Positions 10,093 through 63,050 of a stretch of DNA of 64,000 bases are shown here, one piece after another (within the stretch, counting starts at the first letter, position 1; the number at the start of each line of letters is the position of its first letter). The notes under the pieces were generated by a model. That model was not told where the DNA came from, did not search any database, and worked only from the letters and a program-made list of their open reading frames with translations. The translations under genes were made by a program, and so were the position numbers. The stretch is taken from IMG/VR virus record IMGVR_UViG_3300023184_004198, positions 148,615 through 212,614 of that record, one strand, 5' to 3'.

Positions 10093-10387
10093 CAAACTAA
10101 AAGAACTTGTTGCTGAAGAAGGCAACCCTGAACTAAAACTACGAGTATTTGTACAAGGTGGAGGATGTTCAGGATTCAGTTATGGTTTTACATTTGATGA
10201 AGCTCGAAACGAAGATGATTTTGATTTCTCTTACGACACTGTGCAAGTTGTTGTAGATGCCATGAGCATGCAGTATCTACAAGGATCAGAGATTGATTAC
10301 AAAGAAGATATGATGGGCGCCAGCTTTGTGATCAACAATCCGCAAGCAGTCAGCACTTGCGGATGTGGATCAAGTTTTAGCATTTAA
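10067..10387 (+). CDS. erpA: Iron-sulfur cluster insertion protein, ErpA/IscA (HesB) family
   Basis: [17 protein letters not shown]...[13 protein letters not shown]. Confidence 0.9.
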
Positions 10388-13164: not shown

Positions 13165-14562
13165 TTACGCTACAATTTGATACCAAATATCTCCAGTGAC
13201 ACCAGCAATGTTGGGTCCTGTGGTTCCAATGTAACGTGTGCCGTATCCGTTACTGGTGGTGGCGATAGTAATAGTTCGATCGGCACTGAGATCGCCACCA
13301 CCAGTCAAACCACCTGTGCCTGTAATTGTTCTAGTGTTGGGTGGCACGCCAAGATTGGTTCTTGCCACTGCGGCAGTTGCACCACCGGTACCACCATCTG
13401 CCACAGCCAGTGGAGTGATACCACTTACAGCACCGCCAGTTATGACAACAGCATTGGCATTTTGCACTGCCATGGTGCCCACTGTTGTGATAGCACCTGT
13501 GGCTAGTCCAAGATTGGTTCTTGCATCAGCAGCATTGCTGGCGCCAGTGCCGCCATCTGCTACAGCCAGGTCTGTAATGCCTGAAATACTTCCGCCCAAA
13601 ATAGACACAGCAGTTCTATCTTGTGTGGACATCGTGCCCAGGCCGAGGTTGGTTCTTGCGCCGGCTGCGGTACTAGCACCTGTACCGCCATCTGCTACAG
13701 CCAGATCTGCAATACCTACAATGAACCCACCAGTGATAGCAACCACAGTGGAGTCTTGGAATGCCATGGTGCCTAGAGTGTTTATGTTGTTGATTACAAA
13801 CTCAGTACTGGCAATTTGTGTGGTGCTGGTTCCATTGGCAGCAGTGGGCGCTCTAGGTATTCCAGTAAAAACAGGACTGACTTTTTCATTTTGCACAAAA
13901 CTAGTTGTGGCAATTTGTGTGGTGTTAGTGCCATATGCCGCAGTGGGTGCAGTGGGTACACCGTTGAATGCTGGACTGTTGGACACAAACGCTGTGGTAG
14001 CAATTTGTGTGGTGTTGGTTCCTGCCACAGCAGTGGGTGCTGTGGGTGTGCCAGTAAATGCAGGTGAAACTTTTTCTCCTTGTACAAATGCTGTGGTAGC
14101 AATTTGTGTTGTTCCGGTTCCTGCTGTGGCTGTGGGTGCAGTAGGTGTGCCCGAAAATGCAGGAGATACTTTGTTGTTTTGTACAAATGCTGTAGTAGCA
14201 AGTTGTGTAGTACTGGTGCTGGTGCTGGCTGTGGGTGCAGTGGGTGTGCCTGAGAATGCAGGACTAATTTTTTGTAATTGCACATAATCTTGACTGGCCA
14301 GCGCAACCCAAACATTTGCTGTGCTGTAAGCACTGATGATATCATTGCCGGAATCATACCAAAGTTGACCCAAAATAGGCTGGGTAGGTGCAGTACCGTT
14401 GGCAAAATTTTCCAACAAATATACATAGTTTTCGTTTTGATAATCCCCGTAGTTGGTAACAGCACGACCCACTAGGGCAAGATCTGTGGCAGTGGTGTTA
14501 ACTGTGCCGTCTCCTACAACTGCTACAATTTGTCCACGAGTGTTATTGATGATATATGACAT
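13165..14562 (-). CDS. Tail fibre protein with internal repeats
   Basis: Five SPAFxGTPTAPTA...TTQIATTAFV repeats, three LAVADGGTGA..ARTNLG repeats, GDIWYQ end. Confidence 0.85.
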   Translation of the reverse strand: MSYIINNTRGQIVAVVGDGTVNTTATDLALVGRAVTNYGDYQNENYVYLLENFANGTAPTQPILGQLWYDSGNDIISAYSTANVWVALASQDYVQLQKISPAFSGTPTAPTASTSTSTTQLATTAFVQNNKVSPAFSGTPTAPTATAGTGTTQIATTAFVQGEKVSPAFTGTPTAPTAVAGTNTTQIATTAFVSNSPAFNGVPTAPTAAYGTNTTQIATTSFVQNEKVSPVFTGIPRAPTAANGTSTTQIASTEFVINNINTLGTMAFQDSTVVAITGGFIVGIADLAVADGGTGASTAAGARTNLGLGTMSTQDRTAVSILGGSISGITDLAVADGGTGASNAADARTNLGLATGAITTVGTMAVQNANAVVITGGAVSGITPLAVADGGTGGATAAVARTNLGVPPNTRTITGTGGLTGGGDLSADRTITIATTSNGYGTRYIGTTGPNIAGVTGDIWYQIVA

Positions 14563-47142: not shown

Positions 47143-50100
47143 ATGAACATCAACGAACTAGACTCCTATAATCTTGCAGACGCAGTAAAATTTCACCGCC
47201 GTCTCAATCCCAGAATCTGGGGGCGAGACGAGCACTTGCTGCCTGAAGTGCGTGAAAAATTACTGGCCATTGCTGCGGATTTTCAAGAATTCCTGGGCGT
47301 GGATGATCTCAACGTTCAAGACATCACTATATCAGGCTCAAATGCAGCCTATTCATATACAAAAAATTCAGACATTGACCTGCATCTTGTGGTTGAGATG
47401 CCTGATGATCCTGTGTATCAGGAACTGTTCAACGCTAAAAAATATCAATACAACGACGAGCACAATATAAAGATTGGTGGTGCGGATGTAGAGTTATATG
47501 TACAGCCTAGTGATCAAGCACATCACAGCCAAGGCATTTATTCAATTCAAGACAACCAATGGTTGCAGGTACCTCAACGCAAACGTGCTCAAATAGATGA
47601 TGCGTGTGTGCGTGACAAGGTTGCAGACCTGGATGCCAGAATTCACGCTGCCGTCAAAAGCAAAAATATCGACGCTGTGACCACATTGTGGAACAAGATC
47701 AAAACCATGCGTCAAGCGGGACTCGAACAACATGGTGAGTTTGGCTGTGAAAACATTGCTTTCAAAATGTTGCGCAACAGCGGCTGCATTGGTGCGTTGA
47801 AAGATGCTAAAACAGCACTGCAAGATCGTGAACTCAGTCTGCATGAAGAGCCACGAAAGAGATTTCGTTATGGGTATGGTTCGACAATGGTTGAAGCATC
47901 TACTCCTGATGGAGTCAGTCCTACCACTCAAATGTTTTTGAATGAAGATGACGAGATTGAAACCAAAGTACGTGACTTCATCCAACATGTGACCACAGAA
48001 CTGGGTATTGACCCCATGCCAGAAATTCACTTGCACACTGATCCCGAATGGAGTGTACACAATCACAGTTTTGGTCGTTACGACCCTGACAGTCATACTT
48101 TGAATGTCAGCATGCCCAACCGCCACATCCTGGATGTGTTGCGTACAGTGGCACATGAACTGGTGCATTGCAGTCAAAACCAACAACATGGGCACTTGCC
48201 CGACGATGCAGGTGAAACTGGCAGTCGCTGGGAAAATGATGCCAATGCTCGTGCAGGTATCATCATGCGCGACTGGGCCAACGCACACCCAGAAGATTTT
48301 GAACAAGCACCCTTGGCAGAAAATGCTTCGGGCTATATTCCCAAGAACAAACGAGAAGCAGCCCGGCCACAGTATGCCATGGCACTGAGTGTGGATATCA
48401 AACCTGGGCAGGTGGGCAAAGAAGCCAACAAGTTGGCATTGAAAACTGGACGCAATGGTGAGCCAGGCTTGCTACAACCTGATGCACAAAACTTGTTGCG
48501 TGAGTTTGCAGAATTCGCAGAAGAACAAGAAAACTTGTTTGAAATAACCATGAGCCCCTCAAGTCTGCGCAAATTGAGTGCGCAAACTGGTGCCTTGGCC
48601 GGCATGGAATTTGAAATGTGTGTGCCCAACGTCGAAGGCAACGACGACGGTGATCAAGAACCTGACTATGACTATGATGAACGCTGCCGTAGCATTGAAG
48701 ATGCTGTGCAATTTTTCTATGATGGTGATTGGAACGGTCGTAGAGACGTAGAACGCATGCGTGAAAGAATGCAGAGTGATTTCAGTGATTGGCTGATGGA
48801 CAAGGTCTATCAAGACTGGGAACGCCATGGCGAGGAATATCTGGAAGAATGGGTGCCCAACAACGTGGACGAATCTGAGTGGAATCCTGAAGGCCTGGAA
48901 GGTGAGGCTCGTCAAGAAGCACTAGAAGAATACATCGCTGCTATGCATGCCGATGCCGGCAGCAGTGGTGATGCGTTTGATGAGTACAGAGAAGAAAATC
49001 AAGAGTCATATGACGAAAGTGACTGGTTGGATGACGAAGACCTAGACCGCATGAGTAGTATTGAAAATGCCTACTCAATGAACTGGCCGCACTGGACCAA
49101 CCCCGGCCGTGGCGAAACCAGCATTGAAGATATTGCTGACAGTTTTAGAGACGCAGTGGGCCGCCCAATACTAGCCAGCACCAGTTATCACAGCAGCCGA
49201 GTTGAACGACCCAGCACCAAAAACTTGGAATACATTGTAGAACCTGACAGCAGTATTGATGTTGATGACAACGACGATCGAGGCCTGGAGTTTGTAAGCC
49301 CGCCCTTGCCTATAGAAGAACTGCTGAGTGATTTGAACAAGGTCAAAGCCTGGGCTGATCGTACTGGTTGTTATACCAACGATTCAACCGGCCTGCATAT
49401 CAACGTGTCAGTACCTGGCTGGTCCGGCGACCTCAGTCAATTGGACTATGTAAAACTGGCCCTGTTGCTGGGCGATGAGCATGTGTTGGAATCTTTTGGA
49501 CGTGCTGGCAATACCTATTGCAAGTCAGCCATGGGCAAGATACAAAAAGCAGTGAAACAAAATCCTGACAAGGCAGAAGAACTGTTGGAACGCATGCGAC
49601 AGGGCATGGATCAACTGGCCAGCAAGGCCATACACTCAGGCGTCACAGACAAATACACATCAATCAACCCCAAAAATGGCTACATTGAATTCCGTTCACC
49701 CGGGGGCGATTGGTTGAATGATAACTTCAAAGAAATCGACAACACCCTGCGTAGATTCACAGTGGCCCTGAGTGCAGCCGTGGATCCTAAAGCGTATCGC
49801 CAAGAATATCTAAAGAAACTGTACAAATTGTTGGATGTTCACAGTGAAAAAGATCCCTTATCATACTTTGCAAAATTTGCCGCAGGCGAGTTGCCCAAGG
49901 CAGCACTGAAAAGTTTTGTGCGTCAAGCACAGTTAGAACGTGGTGTCAAGCGTGGCAAAGAAACAGGCCCAATGTGGTGGCGGGTGTACAAAGAAGGCAA
50001 AAATGCTGCCAACGGTGCCGTAATCGAAGTTGTGGCTTCTAGCCGAGAAGAAGCATTAGACAAAGCCGCCGAAGAATGGGGTGTGTTTAGCAACGAATAC

Positions 50101-52059
50101 CGACGTGCCATGTATGCCGAACCTGTACGTCCTTATGACGGAGTTGATACCAGCAGAGAGTATGAATTTTACGACCGACGGTCTGGTGCAGTGGTAGCCA
50201 CATTCCGTGCCAGTGATGATGATGCAGCCATAGCAAAACTGGATCAGTTCCGCGCAGCCCAAGTGCGAACACAGGGAATAACAGTGCCTCAAGCCAATGA
50301 GATATACGGTGTTCGTTCATCAGGAGTGGTCACTGCGCCGCCCAGAGATAGACCATCCACTGCTCCTATTCCAGGAAGCACCTTGGATCTACAACGTCAA
50401 CGACTGGCACAGGCACAATCGGGCGGCAACTGGGGTATTCTAATCACATCAAATGGTCGATTTGTTCGCATGTCTGGCACAGGTGATCCAACTGATAGAG
50501 CCCTGCGCAGATTTCCAAGTCGTGAGGCTGCTGAAGAATTTCTAGCACAAACTCGTGCAGAAAATCCCAACATGAGAACTGACATTGAGATTCGTGAGAT
50601 TCCTGCAGATTATCAATCACCCGGCCAACCTGCAGCAGCAATTCCCACCATTGACATTGATGTTGAACCTGCACCAGCACCACAGCCAGCGGGCATGGGA
50701 CAATGGAACGGACAATGGCGGGTCTTGGTTGGCGGTCAAGAAGTATACCGTTTTGGTGGTGTGGGCAACAGTCAAGCAGACGCCAATAGAATAGCAGCCG
50801 CTTGGTTGCGTGACAACGGACAAGGTGTATCTGGCGAAGGCTTTGAAGTATATCCGGTGATGAACGAAAGTTTGACTGAATCCAATCAACTGCAATTAAA
50901 AGATTTTGTGGTTACAATAAGTCCACATGCCCTGAGCCAAGCATATAACAAGGGTGTGGATGTTGACATTGTAGATGACATTTTGCGCAACATCAGTACA
51001 GTCAAAGATCGTATCATGAGCCTAGAACCTGGCAGAGCCCTGATCCTTCACAACGGACAAGGTACTGGCTTAGGCGTTCGTCGACAACAAGGCAACCGAT
51101 TGACCTTGGCCACAGTGTTTCCCACCAGTCCAGGATTTACTAAAGGCAAACATCCAACTTTTCGAGTTGAAGCAAACACTGTAGATGAAGGTGTAACGTC
51201 TGCCATGGATGCTGACCAAGTATTACACTATGTAAAAAAAACACATGGCGCCGACAAATTCAACATTGAATACAGCATAACTGATCATCCCCAGTGGGAA
51301 TTAAAAAATATTCCGTTGTCACAGTTGCACTTGGATCCTGATGGTGAACAACAGGATCCTTACAATAGAACCAACTGGGTTGACTACGATGTTGTGCGTG
51401 ATTTGATACCTAAGATCAAAAGCGTTCTGAAAAATACACCTATTGTGGTAGACGCCGACGGTTGGATCATTGACGGAAATCATCGTGCCATGGCAGCACT
51501 AGATGCAGGATTAACAAGTGTGCCTGCACTTGTACCTGTTATAGTTAAAGAAGATCTGACAGAAGCCAAAACAACCCGAGAAGATTTTGAGGGTATGACC
51601 ATTGAGATGATTAAAAATGGTCATGTATTAGTGATCAATGCGATTGATGATTGGGGCAATAATATCCTGGGTTCTGTTGCTTTCAATATTGGTGATGACA
51701 ATGATTTAGATCCACAAGACTTAAAGGTCGATGAAAGATATCAAGGTCAAGGTATTGCTCGAGTCATGTATGATTATGCAAAAAGCAAGGGCTACGAGAT
51801 TCATCGTAGTTATGACCAAACTGATGCCGGTCGAGGCTTTTGGGACAAGCATCGCGGAGCGGATGTGCGTGTATGGGAAAACTTTGCGGATGGCAAGAAT
51901 CCCGGACGCAAGGGTTTGAGCAAGCGTGTAGGAGTCAACACCAAAGCGTCAGTGAGTGATTTACGTAAGACTGCTAAAAATTCATCAGGTGAGAAACAAC
52001 GCATGGCCCACTGGCTGGCCAACATGAAAGCCGGCAGAGCCAAGGCCAAGAAGAAATGA
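47143..52059 (+). CDS. 1638-aa polyvalent protein: Pol-beta NTase, zincin peptidase, amidoligase, ParB-like, GNAT and basic modules
   Basis: GSNA.Y...SDIDLH; AHELVH; GMEFE...LEFVSPPL...TGLHIN...IEFRS; IDGNHRA; YQGQGIARVMY. Confidence 0.85.
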   Translation: MNINELDSYNLADAVKFHRRLNPRIWGRDEHLLPEVREKLLAIAADFQEFLGVDDLNVQDITISGSNAAYSYTKNSDIDLHLVVEMPDDPVYQELFNAKKYQYNDEHNIKIGGADVELYVQPSDQAHHSQGIYSIQDNQWLQVPQRKRAQIDDACVRDKVADLDARIHAAVKSKNIDAVTTLWNKIKTMRQAGLEQHGEFGCENIAFKMLRNSGCIGALKDAKTALQDRELSLHEEPRKRFRYGYGSTMVEASTPDGVSPTTQMFLNEDDEIETKVRDFIQHVTTELGIDPMPEIHLHTDPEWSVHNHSFGRYDPDSHTLNVSMPNRHILDVLRTVAHELVHCSQNQQHGHLPDDAGETGSRWENDANARAGIIMRDWANAHPEDFEQAPLAENASGYIPKNKREAARPQYAMALSVDIKPGQVGKEANKLALKTGRNGEPGLLQPDAQNLLREFAEFAEEQENLFEITMSPSSLRKLSAQTGALAGMEFEMCVPNVEGNDDGDQEPDYDYDERCRSIEDAVQFFYDGDWNGRRDVERMRERMQSDFSDWLMDKVYQDWERHGEEYLEEWVPNNVDESEWNPEGLEGEARQEALEEYIAAMHADAGSSGDAFDEYREENQESYDESDWLDDEDLDRMSSIENAYSMNWPHWTNPGRGETSIEDIADSFRDAVGRPILASTSYHSSRVERPSTKNLEYIVEPDSSIDVDDNDDRGLEFVSPPLPIEELLSDLNKVKAWADRTGCYTNDSTGLHINVSVPGWSGDLSQLDYVKLALLLGDEHVLESFGRAGNTYCKSAMGKIQKAVKQNPDKAEELLERMRQGMDQLASKAIHSGVTDKYTSINPKNGYIEFRSPGGDWLNDNFKEIDNTLRRFTVALSAAVDPKAYRQEYLKKLYKLLDVHSEKDPLSYFAKFAAGELPKAALKSFVRQAQLERGVKRGKETGPMWWRVYKEGKNAANGAVIEVVASSREEALDKAAEEWGVFSNEYRRAMYAEPVRPYDGVDTSREYEFYDRRSGAVVATFRASDDDAAIAKLDQFRAAQVRTQGITVPQANEIYGVRSSGVVTAPPRDRPSTAPIPGSTLDLQRQRLAQAQSGGNWGILITSNGRFVRMSGTGDPTDRALRRFPSREAAEEFLAQTRAENPNMRTDIEIREIPADYQSPGQPAAAIPTIDIDVEPAPAPQPAGMGQWNGQWRVLVGGQEVYRFGGVGNSQADANRIAAAWLRDNGQGVSGEGFEVYPVMNESLTESNQLQLKDFVVTISPHALSQAYNKGVDVDIVDDILRNISTVKDRIMSLEPGRALILHNGQGTGLGVRRQQGNRLTLATVFPTSPGFTKGKHPTFRVEANTVDEGVTSAMDADQVLHYVKKTHGADKFNIEYSITDHPQWELKNIPLSQLHLDPDGEQQDPYNRTNWVDYDVVRDLIPKIKSVLKNTPIVVDADGWIIDGNHRAMAALDAGLTSVPALVPVIVKEDLTEAKTTREDFEGMTIEMIKNGHVLVINAIDDWGNNILGSVAFNIGDDNDLDPQDLKVDERYQGQGIARVMYDYAKSKGYEIHRSYDQTDAGRGFWDKHRGADVRVWENFADGKNPGRKGLSKRVGVNTKASVSDLRKTAKNSSGEKQRMAHWLANMKAGRAKAKKK

Positions 52060-52592
52060 AGATGTTAAAAAAATTTCCGCAGTTGGCTACATCTGCTATG
52101 TTGTTTGCTCCCTCGTTGGATGAGCATTACAAAATATTTGCTACGTTTTTCAATGACAAAGATACAGTATTGGATGTAGGGTATGGTGATGGCAGTTTTG
52201 CTAGATACATAGGTGCAGTTGGAGTAGACGAAAATACTGATCTCAGCACAATCAATTTGCAACAATTCGATACATTATTATTTTCTGAATCAATAGGGTA
52301 TTTGAGTTATTATGAATTTTTAACATACTTCAATCAAGTTCAACCTAAAAAAATAGTGATCAAAGATTTTTTGTGTACCCAACCCGTTGCTGTTCCATAT
52401 TTTAATTACAACTTTGAATTTTTTCATTCAACAATTTTGCCTTTTTTATTGAAACAAGGATATCACGCAAATGTTTCGATGTTTGATCCACACGTTGGCC
52501 GTTGGATCTCGTTGTTAGAACAATGCGGACTAGAATTTGTACCTGCACTGGACATTAAAAATATAATTGCAGTGTTTGAAAGATCATTATGA
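52056..52592 (+). CDS. SAM-dependent methyltransferase (AT-rich)
   Basis: VLDVGYGDG; FSESIGY; IKDF. Confidence 0.7.
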   Translation: MKMLKKFPQLATSAMLFAPSLDEHYKIFATFFNDKDTVLDVGYGDGSFARYIGAVGVDENTDLSTINLQQFDTLLFSESIGYLSYYEFLTYFNQVQPKKIVIKDFLCTQPVAVPYFNYNFEFFHSTILPFLLKQGYHANVSMFDPHVGRWISLLEQCGLEFVPALDIKNIIAVFERSL

Positions 52593-53017
52593 GAAACTAC
52601 ATCAACCTAATCGAAGCAGTACAACGGGGTTGTCCCTTGGCCACACATGACATTGATGAGAACTTGAAGAATCGTCAAACAGCCATAGATGAATATCACT
52701 ATGGTCCTGCCAATCCTGCCCGTGCTGAAGACTACTGGAAAAAGAGTGCCAAGATTTTTGGTGTCAGTGAGGCCACTGCAAAGACCATGCAATGTGGCAA
52801 CTGTGCGGCATTTGATGTCAGTGACAGCATGAGAGAATGTATTGCTGCGGGCATACGTGGTGATGCCACCGGAGTTGATGCCAACGCCAGCATCAACTTG
52901 GCTGACCTGGGCTACTGTAACTTTTTACACTTCAAGTGTGCAGGCACACGTAGTTGCAAGGCCTGGATCACTGGTGGGCCCATCACCGAAAAAGACAAAA
53001 ATAAAAGCGCGGACTGA
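52589..53017 (+). CDS. Cys-rich (HiPIP-like spacing) protein with leader
   Basis: MRNYINLIE leader; CGNC.AF...GYC.....C...RSC.AW. Confidence 0.65.
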   Translation: MRNYINLIEAVQRGCPLATHDIDENLKNRQTAIDEYHYGPANPARAEDYWKKSAKIFGVSEATAKTMQCGNCAAFDVSDSMRECIAAGIRGDATGVDANASINLADLGYCNFLHFKCAGTRSCKAWITGGPITEKDKNKSAD

Positions 53018-53020
53018 ACT

Positions 53021-53596
53021 GTGCAACAACATGAATTCACTGCTGAAGCCAGCCCGGACACATTGTCAGGTAGTTTTACTCCAGATCTTGTGAGCAGCAA
53101 GACTTGGTTGTGTAATCAACTCAAAAAACAACTGGGCGATACCAGTGCTGGCGACATCTATATCTTGGGCTCATGGTACGGCAACCTGGGCATATTTTTA
53201 CAGCAGGCCAACATTGACTTTGATCGCTTGATCATGGTAGAAACTCGTCCACGCTTGTTGGCCACAGCACGCCGACTGCTAGAACCACTATATCAAGCGG
53301 GGCAACTAAAGTTGGTGCTGGGTCGTGCTGAACAAATTGAGTATCCACGCAAAAACTTCACAGTGATCAACACCAGCGCCAACGACATGAGTCGTAGTTG
53401 GATAACTAGAGTACCCCTGGGCACTCTTACTGTGATACAATCACGTGACAATGTCAAAGACGTCAAGGTCATTACAGACACAGCAGCACAGTTTTATGCC
53501 AAGTTTCCCCTGGAAAACACTGTGTATTGGGGGCAACGCAGACTGCGTGATCCAGAAACACGCTACACACGCTTCATGAAGATTGGCTATAAATAA
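53021..53596 (+). CDS. Rossmann/methyltransferase-like protein with leader
   Basis: SK.WL, ILGSWYG, INTS, RFM.IG; GTG start. Confidence 0.65.
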   Translation: MQQHEFTAEASPDTLSGSFTPDLVSSKTWLCNQLKKQLGDTSAGDIYILGSWYGNLGIFLQQANIDFDRLIMVETRPRLLATARRLLEPLYQAGQLKLVLGRAEQIEYPRKNFTVINTSANDMSRSWITRVPLGTLTVIQSRDNVKDVKVITDTAAQFYAKFPLENTVYWGQRRLRDPETRYTRFMKIGYK

Positions 53597-53602
53597 ACAA
53601 TC

Positions 53603-53956
53603 ATGAAGTACAGAGAAATTCTTGAAGCCTGCTGGACTGGTTATCGCCAAGCAGGCATGAAAAACAAAGGTGGTCGCCAGGTGCCCAATTGTGTACCAGT
53701 GCATGAAGCTGAACTGGAAGAAAATCTCCGTGACTGGTTCAAAGAAAAATGGGTGCGTTTTGGGCCTGATGGCAAAATTCGCGGCGATTGTGCCAGAGGA
53801 TCAGAATCGGAGGGCAAGCCCAAGTGTTTGCCCCAGGCCAAAGCACATGCCTTGGGCAAAAAAGGTCGTGCAAGTGCAGCGGCTCGCAAGCGCAGAGAAG
53901 ATCCCAACCCCAACCGTACAGGAAAGGCCATCAACGTGGCCACTAAAAAGAAATGA
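53603..53956 (+). CDS. Leader-bearing protein made of two basic Cys micro-domains
   Basis: MKYREILE|ACW.GY...VPNCVP; LEE|NLRDWFKEKWV...C...KPKCLP. Confidence 0.75.
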   Translation: MKYREILEACWTGYRQAGMKNKGGRQVPNCVPVHEAELEENLRDWFKEKWVRFGPDGKIRGDCARGSESEGKPKCLPQAKAHALGKKGRASAAARKRREDPNPNRTGKAINVATKKK

Positions 53957-55464
53957 TCATAGACGAACTATTTGAAGCCCCACAACAGTGTCCCGAATGC
54001 GGTGGCATCAGTTTCTCAGACTTGATCTTGGCTGAAAAGAAAGACGCCTGCTACTACAAAGTCAAAGCGTCAGCCAAAGTATGGCCGTCGGCGTATGCGT
54101 CAGGACGCTTGGTACAGTGCCGCAAAAAAGGTGCTGCCAACTATGGCAACAAGTCGGAAGGTGTGGCGGAAGTATACAATGCAATTACTGGTGCATTACT
54201 AGCATACGATGAGCATGAAAAAAACAAGGGTGTGGCGGAAGGCTCCGGCAACGTTGGCAATGCTATTAAATCTTTATACCAAAAGATCTATGCTGCTGGC
54301 GACGATGAAATAGAATATTTCTACAACGACAGTCCCATTTTTGCACAATACTGGGACGAATACGAAGGTGATCTAAACTCAATCATTGCCGAAGTTGATC
54401 CCGGCGAATTACAAGTAATGCTAGACGAATTAGAATCCTATGCTCAACAGGCAGGGTTGGCGGAAGAACAAGAGTTAGACGAAAAGTGGAGCCAAAAATA
54501 CAAGAGTTCAATCAACTGTGCCAACCCCAAGGGCTTCTCACAAAAGGCACACTGTGCTGGTCGTAAGAAAAATGAATCAATAGCAGAAGCACCACTACCT
54601 GGACAACGTCGTGACCCATTGGATCTTCAACCGTTGGAAGGTGGGTCAGCCGGTGGAGGATCTCTTGGCAGCGGCATTGGCCCACGTCCTGTTGAGCCTT
54701 TGCCTAAGTGGACTCCAACACGAATACCCGGAGTTGATGTTCACACTGGTCCACCTCCTGTGGTAACAAAACCCCCAAACATCAATTCAAAAATAGATCC
54801 AGCTGCAGAAGTACCTGCTTATGTAAGACAAGGTAAACCAGATCCTGTTACTACACCTGTTGGCAAACCCAAAATTCAAATCAAGCCTGGCGAGACCATG
54901 GATCAGGCCATACAACGCACCCGGGCCGAACAAGAATTCAGCAATTTTCTCAAGGGCCAAGGCGGTCAGTCATTTGGCACTGCAGGTGGCGGGCGTGGAG
55001 GTCAAGGTGGGCCAACAGCCTCTCAAGCAACATCTGGCTCTGACCAAGTACCAACAATAAGACTTCCCGGTGGGAAATTAAGCGTGGATCCCGATCGTTT
55101 GTCTCCAAGTGGCAATTATAAAACACCGGCAACATCATCAGATCATGTCGGGGACAAAGAAGCCTATAATGCAGCCTTGAAGATACGAAAAGATCAGTGG
55201 AATCAACTGAAGACTGGCAAAGAAAAAGAAGGCGAGAAACGTCGAAGTGCATGGAAAAATCCCGAAACTGACGTAGACCTAGAAGAAACACGTAAAAAAC
55301 GTGAGCAGCCTGAAGCCAACTACGACGACGAATACGATGCCATGGTTGCTAGAGTTAAAAAATTAGCCGGATTGGGTCCCATGAAAACTGTGTATGATCC
55401 CAACAAGCGACAATATCGCAACATGCCCACAGCAGTACAACCCAAAGTACAGCCTAAAAAATGA
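53953..55464 (+). CDS. Leader-bearing modular polyprotein
   Basis: MIIDELFE; modules bounded by LAE, GVAE, GVAE, GLAE, LDE, IAE, LEE. Confidence 0.8.
   Translation: MIIDELFEAPQQCPECGGISFSDLILAEKKDACYYKVKASAKVWPSAYASGRLVQCRKKGAANYGNKSEGVAEVYNAITGALLAYDEHEKNKGVAEGSGNVGNAIKSLYQKIYAAGDDEIEYFYNDSPIFAQYWDEYEGDLNSIIAEVDPGELQVMLDELESYAQQAGLAEEQELDEKWSQKYKSSINCANPKGFSQKAHCAGRKKNESIAEAPLPGQRRDPLDLQPLEGGSAGGGSLGSGIGPRPVEPLPKWTPTRIPGVDVHTGPPPVVTKPPNINSKIDPAAEVPAYVRQGKPDPVTTPVGKPKIQIKPGETMDQAIQRTRAEQEFSNFLKGQGGQSFGTAGGGRGGQGGPTASQATSGSDQVPTIRLPGGKLSVDPDRLSPSGNYKTPATSSDHVGDKEAYNAALKIRKDQWNQLKTGKEKEGEKRRSAWKNPETDVDLEETRKKREQPEANYDDEYDAMVARVKKLAGLGPMKTVYDPNKRQYRNMPTAVQPKVQPKK
54160..54240 (+). repeat. Direct repeat GGTGTGGCGGAA(G) encoding GVAE
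   Basis: Copies at 54160-54171 and 54229-54240; variant GGGTTGGCGGAA at 54454-54465. Confidence 0.85.
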
Positions 55465-56285
55465 GAGCCCAAGAATTCATCAATGAGGCAACTGATATAA
55501 ATGCACCGCCACCTAATGTCAGGTGGAGCATGGATACAGACGTAGAAGATGGTAAACCAGTGCATGTAGCCACCTGGAAAGATCCCAAAGGCAACAATGT
55601 AAGAAGTTTTTTCAAACCAAATGATGAAGGTACATCTGCCAGGGTATTGTTTGATCGGCCAGACAAAGAAGGCAATCCTTCATACAGTAGAACTGGTCAA
55701 GGTAACGCACCACAAGTTTTTACTGGAGCATTAAGCAATACTAAAACTTTTTTAGATAATAATCCCAATATCCAATCAGTAAATTTTGACAGTCAGGCGC
55801 CTACCCGTAGTAGTCTCTATGCCAGGATGATCGACAAACACGCACCACAAGCAGGCTTGGTTGGCTCAGCAAATGTGAAAACACCTGCTTATGGCGAAGT
55901 AGAGTTTGCACTAAATCGCGCCACAAACGATCAACAACATCAGCCCATTTACAAGCAAGTACGTGATAGTATACCAGCGTTGCAGAAGGATTTTAGAAAT
56001 CCTCCTGGTACACGTTTAGGAGCACCTGTTCCGCAAACTGATTCCCCAACTGGTCCAAAAACTGGTCCGGGTGTTAGCCTAGAGAGACCGCCAGGCTATA
56101 AACAAAACACTGGTAGTTCTACCGCTGCTGCAACAAAATTACCACCGTCCGGAAAGGCTATTCCTCCCTCTGTGACGGGCCAACCGTTTACTCCTAGTTT
56201 TGCTGGTTCCCACAGCAACTCTCCTGGTGCCCAGGCCTTCCAGGACTATCAAGATTGGTTCAAACGGAAGATGCCCCGCATTTAA
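55461..56285 (+). CDS. Leader-bearing hypothetical protein
   Basis: MRAQEFINE; R.SLY.RM motif; Pro-rich tail. Confidence 0.75.
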   Translation: MRAQEFINEATDINAPPPNVRWSMDTDVEDGKPVHVATWKDPKGNNVRSFFKPNDEGTSARVLFDRPDKEGNPSYSRTGQGNAPQVFTGALSNTKTFLDNNPNIQSVNFDSQAPTRSSLYARMIDKHAPQAGLVGSANVKTPAYGEVEFALNRATNDQQHQPIYKQVRDSIPALQKDFRNPPGTRLGAPVPQTDSPTGPKTGPGVSLERPPGYKQNTGSSTAAATKLPPSGKAIPPSVTGQPFTPSFAGSHSNSPGAQAFQDYQDWFKRKMPRI

Positions 56286-56290
56286 TTAAT

Positions 56291-56932
56291 ATGAGAGCAC
56301 GAGAATTCATCAGAGAACTGGACGTAAATCCCATAGCAGGTCAAGAGTTTGATCGGTATGGCCGTCAAGATATTGCAGGACTCGATGCAAGTGAAAAACT
56401 AGGACCGGGTACGGCATCAGTGCAGGGAATTGCAAGGTCGTCTCCAGATTTTGATCCAACACATATTGACAGCAATATTTCTGCAAATTATAGATTGCCA
56501 TTGGGCAAAGGCGACGTTAGTGCTGGTGTTGTAAAAAATTACAATTCTCCTGACAACCAATACAATGTTCAAGGAAATCTTCCTGTGGCAGGTGGTAATT
56601 TCTCTGCTGGAGTTTCTGCTGCCAAAGGCCAACCCAACAATTTTAACTTGGGATATTCTCGTACAGTGGGCCCGGGGCAACTTGATCTTGGCGTCAACAA
56701 GCAAGCCCAAGGCGGACCAAGCAACGTGCAAGCCCGCTACACCATGCCTTTTGAAGAAGAATTAGATGAACAGCAACTGGACGAACTCAACTTCTTGGGA
56801 AGTGAATGCACCAAAGACTGTTCAGGACATCGTGCCGGATATGAGTGGTCAAAGCGCAAAGGTCTGCGCCAAGCCAATTCATGGTCGCCCAGTTTCAACA
56901 AAGGTGCTGGCCTGGCAGTAGCAGGAAAATAA
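56291..56932 (+). CDS. Leader-bearing protein with beta-hairpin repeat domain and Cys micro-domain
   Basis: MRAREFIRE; four amphipathic hairpins ending ARYTMPF; LDE|LNF...CTKDCSGH.AGY.W. Confidence 0.75.
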   Translation: MRAREFIRELDVNPIAGQEFDRYGRQDIAGLDASEKLGPGTASVQGIARSSPDFDPTHIDSNISANYRLPLGKGDVSAGVVKNYNSPDNQYNVQGNLPVAGGNFSAGVSAAKGQPNNFNLGYSRTVGPGQLDLGVNKQAQGGPSNVQARYTMPFEEELDEQQLDELNFLGSECTKDCSGHRAGYEWSKRKGLRQANSWSPSFNKGAGLAVAGK

Positions 56933-56964: not shown

Positions 56965-57807
56965 ATGATTGATATTGTCACAGTTGTTTTTGAACCCGAA
57001 ATCCCCATTTTAAGAGCACAAGCACAAAGTATTGCACTAAACTGCCAACGCATTGGCATACGCAACATCTATGTGGTGTTGAATGATGTAGAAACCGTTG
57101 CGGCACAAATTGACCCATCCTGGTGGGGACCGCTAGCCAACGCAGTGTTGGTGATCCCACGCACAGCATTCTCTACACCTTTTGTGGCGAATGGCTGGGT
57201 TAGTCAGCAGGTACTAAAAATGTTGACCGCTGCAATGAGTTACAACACTTATTCAATGATCTTGGATGCCAAGACTATATTTGTGCGTGAACTAGATCCT
57301 GACACAGTAGTAGATGCCACAGGTCGAATACTCACCGGTCGGTGCCCTATATACCCTGTGTTTGAGCCCAGTAAAAAAATAGTAGAGCAGTTGTTTGAAG
57401 TTGAACTGCCAGAGCAACTGGGCCCAGGTGGAGTTCCGTTTATTGTACACAATGACACAGTACGAATGATGATTGCTGAAACCACCTTGCGCACACGCAC
57501 ATCATTTCCTGCGTGGTTCCAACAACAAGGTATGGTAACAGAATTTATCTTGTACGCAGGATTTGTAAAATTCTTGTGTGGTGATTTATCAGTGTTGTAT
57601 GATGAACAAAACAAACTTGGGCACGTGGTCAATGTCAGTCACGACGAAACTGATTCTTGGTTGATCAAAATCAGTCAAATGGCAAATAAAAAAGCCATCA
57701 CAGTGAGTGTGCATAGAGGTGCGTGGGCCAGACTCACCACGCAACAACGCCAAGAGTATCGCGACTTGCTGATACAACGTGGTATAGAAGCAGCAGGCGA
57801 CTTATGA
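56965..57807 (+). CDS. DUF6492-like putative glycosyltransferase
   Basis: GW.SQQ.LK, ILDAK.IF, TEF.LY. Confidence 0.65.
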   Translation: MIDIVTVVFEPEIPILRAQAQSIALNCQRIGIRNIYVVLNDVETVAAQIDPSWWGPLANAVLVIPRTAFSTPFVANGWVSQQVLKMLTAAMSYNTYSMILDAKTIFVRELDPDTVVDATGRILTGRCPIYPVFEPSKKIVEQLFEVELPEQLGPGGVPFIVHNDTVRMMIAETTLRTRTSFPAWFQQQGMVTEFILYAGFVKFLCGDLSVLYDEQNKLGHVVNVSHDETDSWLIKISQMANKKAITVSVHRGAWARLTTQQRQEYRDLLIQRGIEAAGDL

Positions 57808-58316
57808 AAGCACTTTGTTTGGTAGCACATCCTGATGACTGTGTGATATTTGCGTACAGTTACATCTACAATCATTCTGAGCATGACTGGACCATTGGGT
57901 ATCTGACCTACACCGCGGAAGAACCACGTGCTGCAGAACTTGCAGCCTTTTGGCAACGTCGTGGTATACCTTGTGTGTTTTTGGGATTTGAGGATCACTG
58001 GCATGACAATGAACTAAAACAATTTACTCGATGGACAGAAGAACGTGCTGAGCGAGCCTGTTGGGAATTGGCCCGGCAGTTTGACCTGGTGCTCACACAT
58101 GATGAGCATGGAGACTATGGACACATACATCATGCATTGGTACACCGTGCAGTACAATGGCATCCGTGCCTGGTAACATTTGCTCCGCCTGGACAAGGCA
58201 CAACATACACTGTGCCTAATACTGCATACAGCCTGGATGAGTTGCCACGGCACGCCAACATCATTGCTGGTTTTCACACTATACAACATCAAAATAGTTA
58301 CAAAGAACCCGTATGA
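57804..58316 (+). CDS. PIG-L family de-N-acetylase
   Basis: VAHPDD; LTHD..GDYGH.HH. Confidence 0.8.
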   Translation: MKALCLVAHPDDCVIFAYSYIYNHSEHDWTIGYLTYTAEEPRAAELAAFWQRRGIPCVFLGFEDHWHDNELKQFTRWTEERAERACWELARQFDLVLTHDEHGDYGHIHHALVHRAVQWHPCLVTFAPPGQGTTYTVPNTAYSLDELPRHANIIAGFHTIQHQNSYKEPV

Positions 58317-58984
58317 ACTTAGTAATTTGCGGCGACAGTTTTATGAGCGCTGATACTGGTCGCCCAGGCACACACTTCAGTGAACTTTTAACAACATATG
58401 GTCATTCAGTTATTAATTTAGCACGTGGAGGTATTAGCAATATTGGCATTGCATTTCAACTTGAAACAGCAGTAAACCTTAAGCCAGACATGGTTATATT
58501 TTCATCAACAGGGCCAGATAGAATTGATATTGTTGTAAAAAATAGAAAATTTAATCCTAAATTAGGATTGAAAAATTTTATATATCCTTATAAATCTGAT
58601 TCAAGCACAGGAAGCAAACATGTTGGAGGATTAGATTCATCAGTGCTGTCTGACGTGATTCCTGCGTTTTTATCTCCGCGACCCGACTTGCCTGTTGAAT
58701 TAAATGATCCTGATAGAATTGAATCAATTAAACAGTATCTGGCATTGTACCATGATGCTAGTTTTAAAAACGTTACAGATAATTGGATAATAGGATATTG
58801 GAAATATAAATTAATTGAAAAACAAATACCGTTTATATACCTGCATCATGGCAGCAAATTAGGAAAATTAATGTACGAATACGTAAAACAAAATCCAGAT
58901 AAAATAACGCAATCTGTATATCACACTGATGAACAGACACAAATTTTGATAGCATTAGAATTAAAAAATGAATTAGAAAGATAA
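58313..58984 (+). CDS. SGNH-hydrolase-like protein (AT-rich)
   Basis: GDSF, NLARGG.SN, C-terminal YH. Confidence 0.65.
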   Translation: MNLVICGDSFMSADTGRPGTHFSELLTTYGHSVINLARGGISNIGIAFQLETAVNLKPDMVIFSSTGPDRIDIVVKNRKFNPKLGLKNFIYPYKSDSSTGSKHVGGLDSSVLSDVIPAFLSPRPDLPVELNDPDRIESIKQYLALYHDASFKNVTDNWIIGYWKYKLIEKQIPFIYLHHGSKLGKLMYEYVKQNPDKITQSVYHTDEQTQILIALELKNELER

Positions 58985-58990
58985 CAAGTT

Positions 58991-59803
58991 ATGAAGAAAT
59001 TAATGATAGCAGGATGCAGCTTCAGTGCTGTGAGCAAAACGTTGCCAGGTACATCATGGAGTGAAGTGTTGGCCTCTAAACTTGGCGATTGGGAATTGAT
59101 CAATTTAGCACGTCAAGGCTGTAGCAATGGCGGCATTAGAATTCAAATAGAAGAAATACGCAAACAGCGTCCAGACTTTGCTGTGATAACTCCCACGTTT
59201 TGGGACAGAATGGAAATACCCGCCAAGTCAGTACCTTACGATTGGAATCAAAAACCCAGTTCAGGAGAGAATCCTCCACTAGAACAACACCTGCAGAACA
59301 GAGCCTTGGGCAATGGCTATCGCAGAGAAGATGGCATACGCAATGTCAACTATGGTCGAGAACCGTCAAACATGATCTGCGAAACTATCTTTACACTGGC
59401 AGAAAACTTTGATCATCCTTACAGAATGGGACGCATCACCCGACAATCACAAACAGGTGTGCGGCATTGGATTGACAGCATCTATGACAATGCTTGGAAA
59501 AAACAGTGTGATGAATGGATCATGCGAGATGGCATTACAATGATGTACCTGGATGGAATAAAATTTATTGTGTGTCCCAACTTGCTGTGGCCATTTGATC
59601 CTGACAATCAAACACAATGGCGTGATTCATTTCCAGCATTGATTCCTGATCACTATATCAATCTGGATCCTGCACAGTCACCGCAGGCCATATGTGGCAA
59701 TAATCCATTTAGTGGAGAAGATCCTGGCTATCACTCAAATCCAGTAGGACAAGAAATCATTGCAGAACATTTTTATCAAACGTGGAACGCTTACTTCAAG
59801 TGA
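58991..59803 (+). CDS. SGNH-hydrolase-like protein
   Basis: GCSFS, NLARQGCSN, D.GYH....GQ. Confidence 0.65.
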   Translation: MKKLMIAGCSFSAVSKTLPGTSWSEVLASKLGDWELINLARQGCSNGGIRIQIEEIRKQRPDFAVITPTFWDRMEIPAKSVPYDWNQKPSSGENPPLEQHLQNRALGNGYRREDGIRNVNYGREPSNMICETIFTLAENFDHPYRMGRITRQSQTGVRHWIDSIYDNAWKKQCDEWIMRDGITMMYLDGIKFIVCPNLLWPFDPDNQTQWRDSFPALIPDHYINLDPAQSPQAICGNNPFSGEDPGYHSNPVGQEIIAEHFYQTWNAYFK

Positions 59804-61718: not shown

Positions 61719-62708
61719 TTAGGTAATTGAGCAACTGTTGACACATTGATACAGCCTGCCGTCAGCAATGCTGCTTCTGGACCAGGTCTGTTCCACACGA
61801 TCAAACCACTCCAAGCAATGCGCCAAATCATATTTAAGTGCGTTGTTTTCTTGCACCAATTCTTTTGTCTGTGAATTGCCAGCATGATTCATAGTGTCAG
61901 GATAAAAACCCAGGTAACAACAAGGATATACTGAACCGTCAGCGGCTAGGTATATTTCCTTTTTGAGCTTGTGTTGACAACGTAGTTTTAACTCTGGTGT
62001 GTCTTTGTGCGACTGTACAGTGTGCGGATCAAACCATGTGATGTGACTTTGTAATAGGTCTTTTATGAGTGGCACATGTCCGCTGGGGTCTGTGCCAATC
62101 CTGTGACTGTATTCTCCTGACCTAGTGAACACTGGTCCAGAATCTCTGCCATCGTAGATGTTTTCAAACGCCGCAAATCCCATGTCCTGGGCCAGTTGTT
62201 GACATTGTTGTTCTTGATGCCTGTTATGATCAAACGGAACAAAACGCCATACTGCACGGCCACCTGCGCCAATAAACGCCTGTGCATTGGCTGTGACTCG
62301 GTTCCAATCAGTGTCTTGTCTGTACAAGGCATGAGTATCTGCCAGTCCATCCAAGGCAAATCCCACTGTAACTCCAGGCAAGGCCAGTCTGCGCCACCAG
62401 TCTTGATTGCGTAAACTACCATTGGTGTTGATGTTTATTTTGATACTGTGCGCAACAAGGTACTCGACTATTTCCACAGCGTCACGAGCACTTGCAAAGT
62501 CTCCCAGGTTGCCGTTGAAATTGGCATGTGTTAATTGTGAAATTACGGGACCGACAATGTGTTGAAATTGTGCCAAACTCAGTTCTACATCAGGGTAACC
62601 AGAGTTGTAGTCCATGCCACGATAGTTGCGCATGCACATAGGGCAGCGAGCATTGCACCGGGTAGTGAGTTCCACGTGCACCTGGCGTATTTGATCTAAC
62701 TTTAGCAT
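61719..62708 (-). CDS. Radical SAM protein with Twitch/SPASM-like C-terminus
   Basis: [27 protein letters not shown]; TATAAATA-N4-ATG. Confidence 0.88.
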
Positions 62709-62712
62709 GGGA

Positions 62713-62740
62713 TATTTATAGGCTGCTATTTTGCTAAATA
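62713..62740. promoter_or_regulatory. Divergent pair of late-type promoters
   Basis: TATAAATA on - (62713-62720) and TAAATA on + (62735-62740), each 4 nt from an ATG. Confidence 0.65.
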
Positions 62741-62744
62741 CAAT

Positions 62745-63050
62745 ATGCAAACACATTTTGTCCGAGTTGAATGCGATGTCACAGCCAAGGTACATGGTCA
62801 GCCACTGCGTTACCGAGCTTATGTAAACAATGAACTGTTTGTTGAACGCACCTGGATCTGGACTGACTGCTATTTGGAAGAGTCATTTCAAATCCAAGCC
62901 GGACCGGGAGTGTATCCCATACGATTTGAAACTGTGGACGAAGCCAATGGTCGCATCAAAGTGCGCAATCACAGAATTGTAACAGGCCCAGGCAGAATAA
63001 TAGAGTATCAAGGCGAACCAAGTTTGGAGATATCAGATGCAAGTACGTGA
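62745..63050 (+). CDS. Hypothetical protein
   Basis: YR.YVN.ELF.ERTWIW; 101 aa. Confidence 0.7.

What the first reader, a model, noticed from the sequence alone, without database searches (positions are those of the whole stretch)
56291..56760. Outer-membrane-barrel-like domain with a capsid-type leader instead of a signal peptide
Four Gly-turn amphipathic hairpins (LDASEKLGPGTASVQG; ISANYRLPLGKGDVSAGV; YNVQGNLPVAGGNFSAGV; FNLGYSRTVGPGQLDLGV) end in VQARYTMPF, resembling a beta-signal (Y-x-x-x-F), directly before an acidic EEELDE linker. There is no Sec signal. Cleavage would place the F near the C-terminus. It is a candidate ejected pore/channel or an attacin-like membrane-active protein.
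Basis: inference. Interest (0 to 1): 0.6.

Follow-up and report, generated by a model that had tools for sequence, protein, structure and literature searches.

The report
Porin-like protein packed in phage head
A giant freshwater phage related to T4 encodes a small protein that carries T4's address tag for packing into the phage head; its body is confidently predicted to fold like about half of a bacterial outer-membrane pore, so it may be a membrane-active protein injected with the DNA, though this is untested.

Summary
Window 56291-56932 (+) encodes a 213-aa protein in three parts:
- a 9-aa leader, MRAREFIRE, which shares its core with the T4 capsid-targeting sequence MKTYQEFIAE;
- a 145-aa Gly/Asn/Ala-rich beta domain;
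- an acidic linker with two L-D-E sites, followed by a 47-aa C-terminal module.

With a 29-sequence alignment, AlphaFold2 gives a 10-strand antiparallel meander (pLDDT 89). In PDB and ESM Atlas searches almost every top match is a stretch of a membrane beta-barrel. One face of the sheet is hydrophobic, and this is conserved in relatives of 25-30% identity. The only Pfam families touched, all below cut-off, are Porin_4 and Usher. There is no Sec signal.

The phage is a T4-related jumbo myovirus from lakes. It has a Gp23 capsid protein, and sister genomes encode the gp21-type protease next to theirs.

The C-terminal module sits on hundreds of unrelated cargo proteins and is always preceded by L/I-x-E. 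The beta domain is rare, is absent from sister genomes, and elsewhere lies inside large multi-domain phage proteins, some with lytic transglycosylase domains.

Best reading: an accessory, head-packaged, ejected protein with an amphipathic porin-like sheet. Membrane action is inferred. A closed barrel, oligomerisation and packaging were not shown.

The parts
56291..56932 (+). Whole gene, 213 aa (P0001) plus stop codon. Architecture: leader, beta domain, linker, C-terminal module.
   Evidence: Full-length homologues of 74-80% identity also start at MRAREFI.
56291..56317 (+). Residues 1-9, MRAREFIRE. A T4-type capsid-targeting propeptide that ends in I-R-E, which fits the L/I-x-E motif.
   Evidence: T4 IPII and IPIII start MKTYQEFIAE. 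gp21 cuts after L/I-x-E, and the CTS is the first 10 aa of IPIII (PMC9026906). Four genes of this genome share MRA[QR]EF[IV]xE. 129 of 179 distinct proteins with the C-terminal module start with such a leader.
56321..56752 (+). Residues 11-154. A 10-strand antiparallel amphipathic beta meander, porin-like, ending in R-Y-T-M-P-F.
   Evidence: AF2 pLDDT 89.2. VIA-align Z 8.8-11.9, with 49 of the top 50 matches being membrane barrels. ESM Atlas TM 0.72-0.81 to usher, porin and autotransporter barrels. Dyad alternation conserved. Family alignment A3. Porin_4 hit in 9 of 29 members and Usher in 2 of 29, all below cut-off.
56753..56788 (+). Residues 155-166, acidic linker EEELDEQQLDEL with two L-D-E triplets. 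These are candidate prohead-protease sites.
   Evidence: Read. [L/I]-x-E stands at -5 to -3 before F-[LK]-G-S in 179 of 179 distinct module-bearing proteins, and x varies (D, R, N, A, S, Q). T4 Alt is cut at both ends.
56789..56929 (+). Residues 167-213. A conserved 47-aa C-terminal module (NFLGSECTKDCSGH...AVAGK) shared by many unrelated cargo proteins. Function unknown; proposed to be a second handle.
   Evidence: 687 proteins and 387 IMG/VR loci. 94-98% aa identity at 81-89% nucleotide identity, which indicates purifying selection. Summed contig depth is 10-17 times higher in lake metagenomes, from contigs that match only this part. It occurs once in this genome.
47143..56285 (+). Seven upstream same-strand genes with leader-like N-termini, forming a cargo island. 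They include a 1638-aa polyvalent protein (47143-52059), P0003 (53953-55464) and P0002 (55461-56285).
   Evidence: Their cargo domains recur in other phages fused to the C-terminal module.

Best explanation
The gene encodes an accessory internal-head (capsid-packaged, ejected) protein of a T4-related jumbo myovirus from lakes.

Proposed steps, all inferred from T4:
1. The 9-aa leader docks the protein onto the scaffolding core of the prohead.
2. The gp21-type prohead protease cuts after I-R-E9. It probably also cuts after L-D-E160 and/or L-D-E165, which would free a ~16-kDa beta domain from the conserved C-terminal module.
3. The domain is stored with the DNA and leaves through the tail at infection.

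The cargo itself is predicted here to be a single-layer, 10-strand amphipathic beta sheet. It has one conserved hydrophobic face and one polar face, and the curvature of about half of a 16-19-strand outer-membrane barrel. Such a sheet cannot stay alone in water. I therefore infer that it buries its hydrophobic face in a host envelope membrane, either as an oligomeric pore or as a lipid-binding sheet. It would act as a dispensable, host-specific effector, not as a core part of the DNA conduit.
For: Leader:
- P0001 shares the E-F-I-x-E core with the T4 IPII/IPIII propeptide (MKTYQEFIAE).
- T4 biology, from PMC9026906 and PMC3012670: the CTS is the first 10 residues; gp21 cuts after L/I-x-E; Alt is cut at both ends; the internal proteins are diverse and share only the CTS.

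Lineage:
- The genome has a Gp23 capsid protein (E 2e-97) at genome positions 216-1184, the start of the contig.
- It also has a sheath, tube, large terminase (TerL), a gp32-like protein and UvsX.
- Sister genomes share TerL at 75-83% identity and encode Peptidase_S77 (E ~1e-25) 1.4-1.9 kb upstream of their capsid gene. In this record that position lies off the contig end.

Modularity:
- 179 of 179 distinct proteins with the C-terminal module have L/I-x-E just before it, and 129 of 179 have the leader.
- The same beta domain occurs alone or fused to GNAT or DUF6934 cargo.

Fold:
- AF2 pLDDT 89.2.
- Top structural matches are nearly all membrane barrels: Z up to 11.9, and rmsd 3.0-3.4 A over 138-144 residues for CdiB, FhaC and OmpT.
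- ESM Atlas TM 0.72-0.81.
- Conserved alternation, 0 of 2000 shuffles.
- The only Pfam families touched are Porin_4 (9 of 29 members, best E 3.8e-5) and Usher (2 of 29).

Company the domain keeps:
- Distant relatives lie inside 500-1400-aa phage proteins that carry N-terminal SLT lytic transglycosylase domains, a virion-structural PHROG, or a weak tape-measure-like hit (P0141, P0146, P0135).
- One of these genes lies next to a terminase gene.
- The best viral structural match is a 'large polyvalent protein associated domain' protein.

Accessory status:
- The domain is absent from five sister genomes.
- It is found in only 10 protein clusters by word search.

Occurrence in nature:
- The gene is intact in independent lake metagenomes.
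- Two contigs of a freshwater metatranscriptome lie on the beta domain.
Against: - No virion proteomics exists. Packaging, cleavage and ejection are all inferred from T4.
- The protease gene is not on this 61%-complete record.
- The model is an open sheet, not a closed barrel. The best match to a designed 10-strand barrel is poor (TM ~0.5, rmsd ~8 A).
- The dimer prediction gave no verdict.
- Foldseek E-values are weak (1e-3 to 3e-2), and any long beta meander will match barrel segments.
- The second- and tenth-ranked VIA matches are lipovitellin, a lipid-binding sheet that is not a pore.
- Hydrophobic stripes of 3-5 residues per strand are on the short side for a bilayer.
- All Pfam hits are below the gathering score, and P0001 itself hits nothing.
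- T4 internal proteins are thought to enter the cytoplasm, where no machinery inserts beta-barrels.
Confidence: 0.45

Rival explanations
1. It is packaged in the head but is not membrane-active. The amphipathic sheet buries its hydrophobic face by self-association (a sandwich or fibril-like stack) or against another head protein or the capsid wall. It would then serve inside the head as filler, DNA-organising or inner-body-like material, or as a soluble decoy after ejection.
For: - The leader, protease and lineage evidence is the same as for the best explanation.
- The model is an open sheet and no closed barrel was obtained.
- The hydrophobic stripes are short.
- T4 internal proteins act in the cytoplasm or inside the head.
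Against: - The domain is absent from five sister genomes, so it is not a core head component.
- Every high-ranking structural match but one is a membrane barrel, and the exception binds lipid.
- The polar face has few basic residues, so DNA binding is unlikely.
- Relatives sit in proteins with lytic transglycosylase domains, which act on the envelope.
Confidence: 0.25
2. It is not packaged at all. The conserved N-terminus and C-terminal module would be recombination or translation cassettes of a family of cytoplasmic phage proteins, and the resemblance to the T4 CTS would be coincidental.
For: - No proteomic evidence exists.
- The leader is only 9 residues long.
- The protease gene is not on this record.
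- Modules are plainly shuffled between genes.
Against: - The leader shares E-F-I-x-E with the T4 CTS and ends in the protease motif.
- Module-bearing proteins keep L/I-x-E with a variable middle residue in 179 of 179 cases. That is the signature of a cleavage site, not of a DNA cassette.
- The module is conserved at the protein level through many synonymous changes.
- The lineage has the T4 gp21-gp23 head module.
Confidence: 0.12
3. It is a conventional phage-borne outer-membrane porin (a moron), exported by Sec and inserted by BAM into the outer membrane of the infected cell.
For: - Sub-threshold Porin_4 and Usher hits.
- Barrel-like fold matches.
- Porin-annotated proteins exist among uncultured phages.
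Against: - No signal peptide; the N-terminus is highly charged and matches the CTS.
- Only 10 strands, in an open sheet.
- Both kinds of turn are short, with no long extracellular loops.
- A conserved soluble C-terminal module follows the last strand, so F154 is not C-terminal in the primary product.
- In relatives the domain is embedded in the middle of large cytoplasmically made proteins.
Confidence: 0.03
4. It is an attacin-like Gly-rich antimicrobial protein that acts on the envelope from outside.
For: Gly-rich composition (13.5% Gly).
Against: - No Pfam hit to any attacin family at E up to 0.1, or up to 0.05 across the 29 family members.
- The protein has no secretion signal.
- The fold matches are to barrels.
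Confidence: 0.02

Closest known systems
T4 internal head proteins IPI, IPII and IPIII, and Alt (CTS-bearing, gp21-processed, ejected proteins)
   Same: - A short N-terminal propeptide with the core E-F-I-x-E that ends in L/I-x-E.
- The phage lineage has a Gp23 capsid and an S77 protease.
- The cargo is highly variable and dispensable, and only the targeting part is conserved.
- Possible cleavage at both ends, as in Alt.
   Different: - The leader is one residue shorter (MRAxEFIxE).
- The cargo is a predicted membrane-type beta sheet. It is not a small basic protein, a restriction inhibitor or an ADP-ribosyltransferase.
- It carries an extra, strongly conserved 47-aa C-terminal module that T4 proteins lack, to my knowledge.
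- No experimental evidence of packaging.
Polyvalent proteins of phages and conjugative elements (Iyer et al. 2017, PMC5512222)
   Same: - Relatives of the beta domain lie in 500-4000-aa multi-domain phage proteins alongside nucleotidyltransferase, deaminase, ParB, SLT and JAB-like domains.
- The best viral structural match is annotated 'large polyvalent protein associated domain'.
- A 1638-aa polyvalent protein lies 4 kb upstream.
   Different: - Here the domain is a stand-alone cargo between two conserved handles.
- That paper does not contain the words porin, outer membrane or beta-barrel, so this domain seems not to have been described there.
Gram-negative outer-membrane beta-barrels (porins/Porin_4, ushers, Omp85/TpsB such as FhaC, CdiB and TamA) and VDAC/Tom40
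   Same: - Long antiparallel meander strands with dyad hydrophobic/polar alternation, and conserved Tyr on the hydrophobic face.
- Structural superposition at rmsd 3.0-3.7 A over 137-144 residues.
- Sub-threshold Porin_4 and Usher profile hits.
- Last strand with alternating Y-x-M-x-F.
   Different: - No signal peptide.
- Only 10 strands, in an open sheet.
- No long loops.
- Scores lie below the Pfam cut-offs.
- The terminal Phe is followed by a linker and a further module.
- Encoded as phage head cargo.
Ejection proteins that build trans-envelope channels (T7 gp14/gp15/gp16, P22 gp7/gp16/gp20)
   Same: Head-internal proteins that leave with the DNA and act in the envelope. Some relatives of this domain carry an N-terminal lytic transglycosylase, as T7 gp16 does (from knowledge; SLT hits).
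   Different: - No sequence relation was found.
- Those proteins are essential and are not known to be beta-barrels (from knowledge).
- This domain is accessory.
- The phage has a contractile tail.

Membership tests
T4-type CTS-bearing internal head proteins | N-terminal ~10-residue propeptide resembling MKTYQEFIAE | tested here: met
   P0001 starts MRAREFIRE, against T4 IPII/IPIII MKTYQEFIAE. They share E-F-I-x-E.
T4-type CTS-bearing internal head proteins | Propeptide ends in the gp21 cleavage motif L/I-x-E | tested here: met
   I7-R8-E9. The motif is taken from PMC9026906.
T4-type CTS-bearing internal head proteins | The phage has a gp21-type prohead protease (Peptidase_S77) and a Gp23-type capsid | tested here: inconclusive
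   Gp23 is present in this genome (E 2e-97). S77 is absent from this 61%-complete record. S77 is present 1.4-1.9 kb upstream of the capsid gene in sister genomes that share TerL at 75-83% identity. Here the capsid gene sits at the contig start.
T4-type CTS-bearing internal head proteins | The protein is found processed in the virion and is ejected into the host | not testable with these tools
   The phage is uncultured and no proteome is available.
Gram-negative porin (Pfam Porin_4, PF13609) | Score at or above the Pfam gathering threshold (27 bits) | tested here: not met
   P0001 gives no hit. The homologues P0010 and P0011 score 18-20.5 bits. 9 of 29 family members hit at E <= 0.05, best 3.8e-5.
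Gram-negative porin / classical outer-membrane protein | Cleavable Sec signal peptide | tested here: not met
   The N-terminus has 11 charged residues in its first 30 and no hydrophobic core. It matches a CTS instead.
Gram-negative porin / classical outer-membrane protein | Closed barrel with an even number of strands (8-26) within one chain | tested here: not met
   10 strands that superpose on 10 strands of 12-24-strand barrels. The fit to a closed 10-strand barrel is poor (TM ~0.5, rmsd ~8 A).
Gram-negative porin / classical outer-membrane protein | Dyad-repeat amphipathic strands with a hydrophobic face | tested here: met
   (0 of 2000 shuffles).
Gram-negative porin / classical outer-membrane protein | C-terminal beta-signal with an aromatic residue at the very C-terminus | tested here: inconclusive
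   Y150-x-M152-x-F154 alternate as in a beta-signal and are conserved. However, F154 is followed by 59 more residues. It would lie 6-11 residues from the end only after the inferred cleavage. AF2 ends the last strand at T151.
Polyvalent proteins (Iyer et al. 2017) | Many unrelated effector domains in one large polypeptide of a phage or conjugative element | tested here: not met
   P0001 has a single cargo domain. Its relatives (P0124, P0125, P0129, P0141, P0146) and the neighbouring gene 47143-52059 do meet this feature.
Attacin | Match to the attacin Pfam domains | tested here: not met
   No hit at E <= 0.1 or at E <= 0.05 in 29 members.

The most novel reading that the evidence does not exclude
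A phage stores, inside its head, an unfolded 'half-barrel' subunit with no Sec signal. After ejection, the subunit assembles with copies of itself into a multi-chain beta-barrel pore in a host membrane, without Sec and perhaps without BAM. This would be a capsid-delivered beta-barrel pore-former, a class of ejected phage effector not described so far. The leader and the C-terminal module would form a general two-handle system for loading arbitrary cargo into jumbo-phage heads.
Probability: 0.2. Interest if true: 0.85.

Novelty: new variant of a known kind. Interest (0 to 1): 0.62.

Why it matters
Head-packaged, ejected proteins are the first phage molecules to meet the host, and those known so far are soluble enzymes or inhibitors.

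- A porin-like amphipathic sheet among them would extend that repertoire to direct membrane action.
- It would also give a natural example of a beta-barrel-type protein that reaches a membrane without a signal peptide.
- The leader plus the L-x-E-flanked C-terminal module, found on hundreds of different cargo proteins in lake phages, marks out a large, easily recognised catalogue of candidate injected effectors of uncultured jumbo phages.
- The pair could also serve as a packaging tag, as the T4 CTS does.

Tried and rejected
- Complex prediction with 2 copies of the domain: no verdict (score 0.05, controls not run). This is not evidence either way.
- Cultured-phage records: no DNA or protein match for the region, for P0001, or for two distant relatives.
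- PDB sequences with the family profile: nothing significant, best E 0.16.
- Pfam and PHROGs on P0001: no family.
- ESM Atlas feature search with the C-terminal module: only unnamed viral clusters, scores <= 0.81.
- The Peptidase_S77 search of this record was blank. The contig end explains this.
- Promoter and terminator scans were at chance level.
- The T4 late-promoter word TATAAATA occurs 3 times against 1.25 expected. One copy at 53588 lies 8 bp before a cargo gene. This is not significant.
- No tRNAs in the window.
- Literature searches found no description of a porin-like ejected or internal phage protein. This is absence from a partial library only.
- P0126 and P0133, the multi-stretch hits of the big search, were left out of the family. 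P0133 is an unrelated Ig-like repeat protein, and P0126 was not inspected.
- An ungapped comparison of the C-terminal module understates identity for copies with a 1-residue indel. Only the indel-free copies were used.

Full report
**The gene and the observation.**
Window 56291-56932 (+) is a 213-aa ORF, P0001. The ATG at 56291 is the likely start, because every full-length homologue begins MRAREFI. The N-terminus is highly charged, with 11 charged residues in the first 30 and no hydrophobic core, so there is no Sec signal.

**Architecture.**
A word search found 687 relatives. Nearly all match only the last ~55 residues, at about 90% identity, and carry quite different bodies: GNAT, nucleotidyltransferase, DUF6934 and others. 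The protein therefore has four parts:
- leader, residues 1-9;
- beta domain, residues 11-154;
- acidic linker, residues 155-166, with two L-D-E triplets;
- C-terminal module, residues 167-213.

The beta domain is rare. The word search found 10 protein clusters at 67-72% identity, in which the domain is either alone or fused in frame to GNAT or DUF6934 cargo.

An exhaustive profile search found 27 proteins at E <= 1e-3. Most of the 27 proteins are multi-domain phage proteins of 460-1400 aa in which the domain is internal. Examples:
- P0124: cytidylyltransferase, then the domain, then dCMP deaminase.
- P0141 and P0146: an N-terminal SLT lytic transglycosylase plus the domain.
- P0135: the domain plus a weak, sub-threshold tape-measure-like hit.
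- The P0146 gene lies directly after a terminase gene.

The alignment of 29 domains (A3) shows conserved A-N-Y..G-D, P-x-G-x-G, G-Y-S..V-G-P-G-x-L and Q-x-Q-Y-x-[MIV]-P-F-A-x-G-G at 24-36% identity among the 23 distant members.

**Fold.**
AF2 with nine close homologues gave a beta meander at pLDDT 76.5. With A3 it gave pLDDT 89.2 and pTM 0.69, all five models scoring 88.2-89.2, with ten antiparallel strands.
- Foldseek against the PDB returned almost only membrane barrels, with weak E-values (1e-3 to 3e-2) and TM 0.5-0.64.
- The Foldseek-independent search gave Z 8.8-11.9 over the whole model. 49 of the top 50 entries were outer-membrane, mitochondrial or chloroplast barrels, and one was lipovitellin.
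- The tightest fits were CdiB (rmsd 3.0 A over 144 residues), FhaC (3.3 A over 138), VDAC (3.2 A over 132) and TamA (3.3-3.8 A over 137).
- ESM Atlas models of usher, porin and autotransporter barrels align at TM 0.72-0.81.
- The fit to a closed designed 10-strand barrel is poor (TM ~0.5, rmsd ~8 A).

I read the model as an open sheet with the curvature of about half a mid-size barrel. I could not inspect coordinates.

**Amphipathicity.**
In strands 3-10 one set of alternate residues is hydrophobic (mean Kyte-Doolittle +1 to +2) and the other polar (-0.7 to -3.1). In the distant members alone, the hydrophobic positions are 87-100% hydrophobic and the intervening positions are mostly 0-20%. The alternation score is 1.24 against 0.56 +/- 0.13 in shuffles, and 0 of 2000 shuffles reach it. 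Three Tyr on the hydrophobic face (Y67, Y122, Y150) are invariant or nearly so.

When all 29 domains were scanned against Pfam, the only families touched were Porin_4 (9 members, best E 3.8e-5) and Usher (2 members). All hits were below the gathering score, and P0001 itself hit nothing. The profile finds nothing among PDB sequences.

Equally, a closed barrel is not shown.

**The leader and the phage.**
T4 IPII and IPIII begin MKTYQEFIAE. P0001 begins MRAREFIRE.

According to the review PMC9026906:
- the first 10 residues of IPIII are the capsid-targeting sequence;
- gp21 cuts after L/I-x-E;
- Alt is trimmed at both ends.

PMC3012670 states that T-even internal proteins are a diverse set that shares only the CTS.

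The window is the last 64 kb of a 212,614-bp IMG/VR record judged 61% complete. The genome encodes a Gp23 capsid protein (E 2e-97), a contractile sheath, a tube, the large terminase (TerL), a gp32-like SSB and UvsX. Sister records of 300-347 kb, one with terminal repeats and 100% complete, share TerL at 75-83% identity. They encode Peptidase_S77 (E ~1e-25) 1.4-1.9 kb upstream of their capsid gene. In this record the capsid gene sits at bases 216-1184, so the protease falls just off the contig. That explains the blank.

**The C-terminal module.**
It occurs once in this genome but at 387 loci in IMG/VR. Among 179 distinct module-bearing proteins:
- all 179 have [L/I]-x-E three residues before F-[LK]-G-S, with a variable middle residue (D, R, N, A, S, Q);
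- 129 start with the strict leader.

Indel-free copies are 94-98% identical in protein at 81-89% DNA identity, which indicates purifying selection on the peptide. In lake metagenomes the module region has 10-17 times the summed contig depth of the rest of the gene. The extra depth comes from contigs that match only the module and then diverge.

I infer a second handle set off by a protease site. Its partner is unknown.

**Context.**
Genes 47143-56932 form a same-strand run whose products all begin with leader-like N-termini. Their bodies recur in other phages fused to the module. The first gene is a 1638-aa polyvalent protein with nucleotidyltransferase, amidoligase, ParB-like and GNAT regions.

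The beta domain is missing from five sister genomes; the only hit is one marginal partial match. It is therefore accessory cargo, not a core head or conduit component.

The gene is intact in lake and freshwater metagenomes of several independent studies. Two contigs of a freshwater metatranscriptome lie on it, which is only a hint of expression.

**Interpretation.**
- Shown: the sequence features, the family, the predicted fold class, the conserved amphipathic pattern, the T4-type lineage, and the co-occurrence of leader, L-x-E and module.
- Inferred from T4: packaging by the leader, cleavage at E9 and at E160/E165, storage in the head and ejection.
- Inferred from the physics of a single-layer amphipathic sheet and from the company the domain keeps (SLT-bearing virion proteins): action at a host membrane, as an oligomeric pore or as a lipid-binding sheet.
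- Not supported: attacin likeness, and a classical Sec/BAM porin.
- The dimer test gave no verdict.

I found no description of such a cargo in the polyvalent-protein paper or in full-text searches. I rate it a new variant of a known kind: T4-type internal proteins and polyvalent cargo.

Noticed in passing
window 47143-56285: Seven same-strand genes upstream all start with CTS-like N-termini (MNINELDSY, MRNYINLIEA, QQHEFTAEA, MKYREILEA, MIIDELFEA, MRAQEFINE). Their bodies recur in other IMG/VR phages fused to the conserved C-terminal module. This looks like a cargo island of candidate ejected proteins. The first gene is a 1638-aa polyvalent protein (nucleotidyltransferase, Amidoligase_2, ParB-like, GNAT).
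   Followed up: partly
window 53953-55464 (P0003): Two small Cys/Lys-rich modules (YYKVKASAKVWPSAYASGRLVQCRKKG and KWSQKYKSSINCANPKGFSQKAHCAGRKK) recur in P0124 and in many short leader-plus-module proteins (for example L055, L069, L072, L085, L088). They have no Pfam family. PHROGs 727, 3477 and 38880 hit the first one.
   Followed up: partly
window 56789-56929 and 387 IMG/VR loci (L011-L090): The 47-aa C-terminal module (C-x3-C-x-G-H...) is under strong purifying selection and sits on hundreds of different cargo proteins of lake jumbo phages. It is always preceded by L/I-x-E. Its fold and its partner are unknown.
   Followed up: partly
window 40852-43107: A phage-encoded ClpA/ClpB-type double AAA+ unfoldase of 751 aa (Clp_N, AAA, AAA_lid_9, AAA_2, ClpB_D2-small; PHROG 4871, E 1e-236).
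   Followed up: no
window 10384-13161 (-): A 924-aa ORF with a Hint/intein-like segment at residues 637-736 and a partial match to a major-head-protein PHROG. It lies next to a tail-fibre gene (13165-14562).
   Followed up: no
genome C1:216-1184 (outside the window): The Gp23-type major capsid gene lies at the very start of the contig. In sister genomes the S77 prohead protease lies 1.4-1.9 kb upstream of it, so the protease is cut off here.
   Followed up: yes
genome C1:36763 and 37628 (outside the window; L002:17663-18031 and 18528-18911): Two more small genes (123 and 128 aa) start MRAQEFVTE and MRAREFITE, without the C-terminal module. They have no PHROG family.
   Followed up: partly
window 56965-59803 and 61719-62795; genome 39.5-55 kb: Downstream of the gene lie a DUF6492 protein, a PIG-L de-N-acetylase and two unassigned genes. 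Elsewhere there are at least five radical-SAM genes. Together these suggest sugar or base modification chemistry.
   Followed up: no
window 53588-53595: The T4 late-promoter word TATAAATA lies 8 bp before the start of cargo gene 53603. There are only 3 copies in the window against 1.25 expected, so this is not significant.
   Followed up: yes
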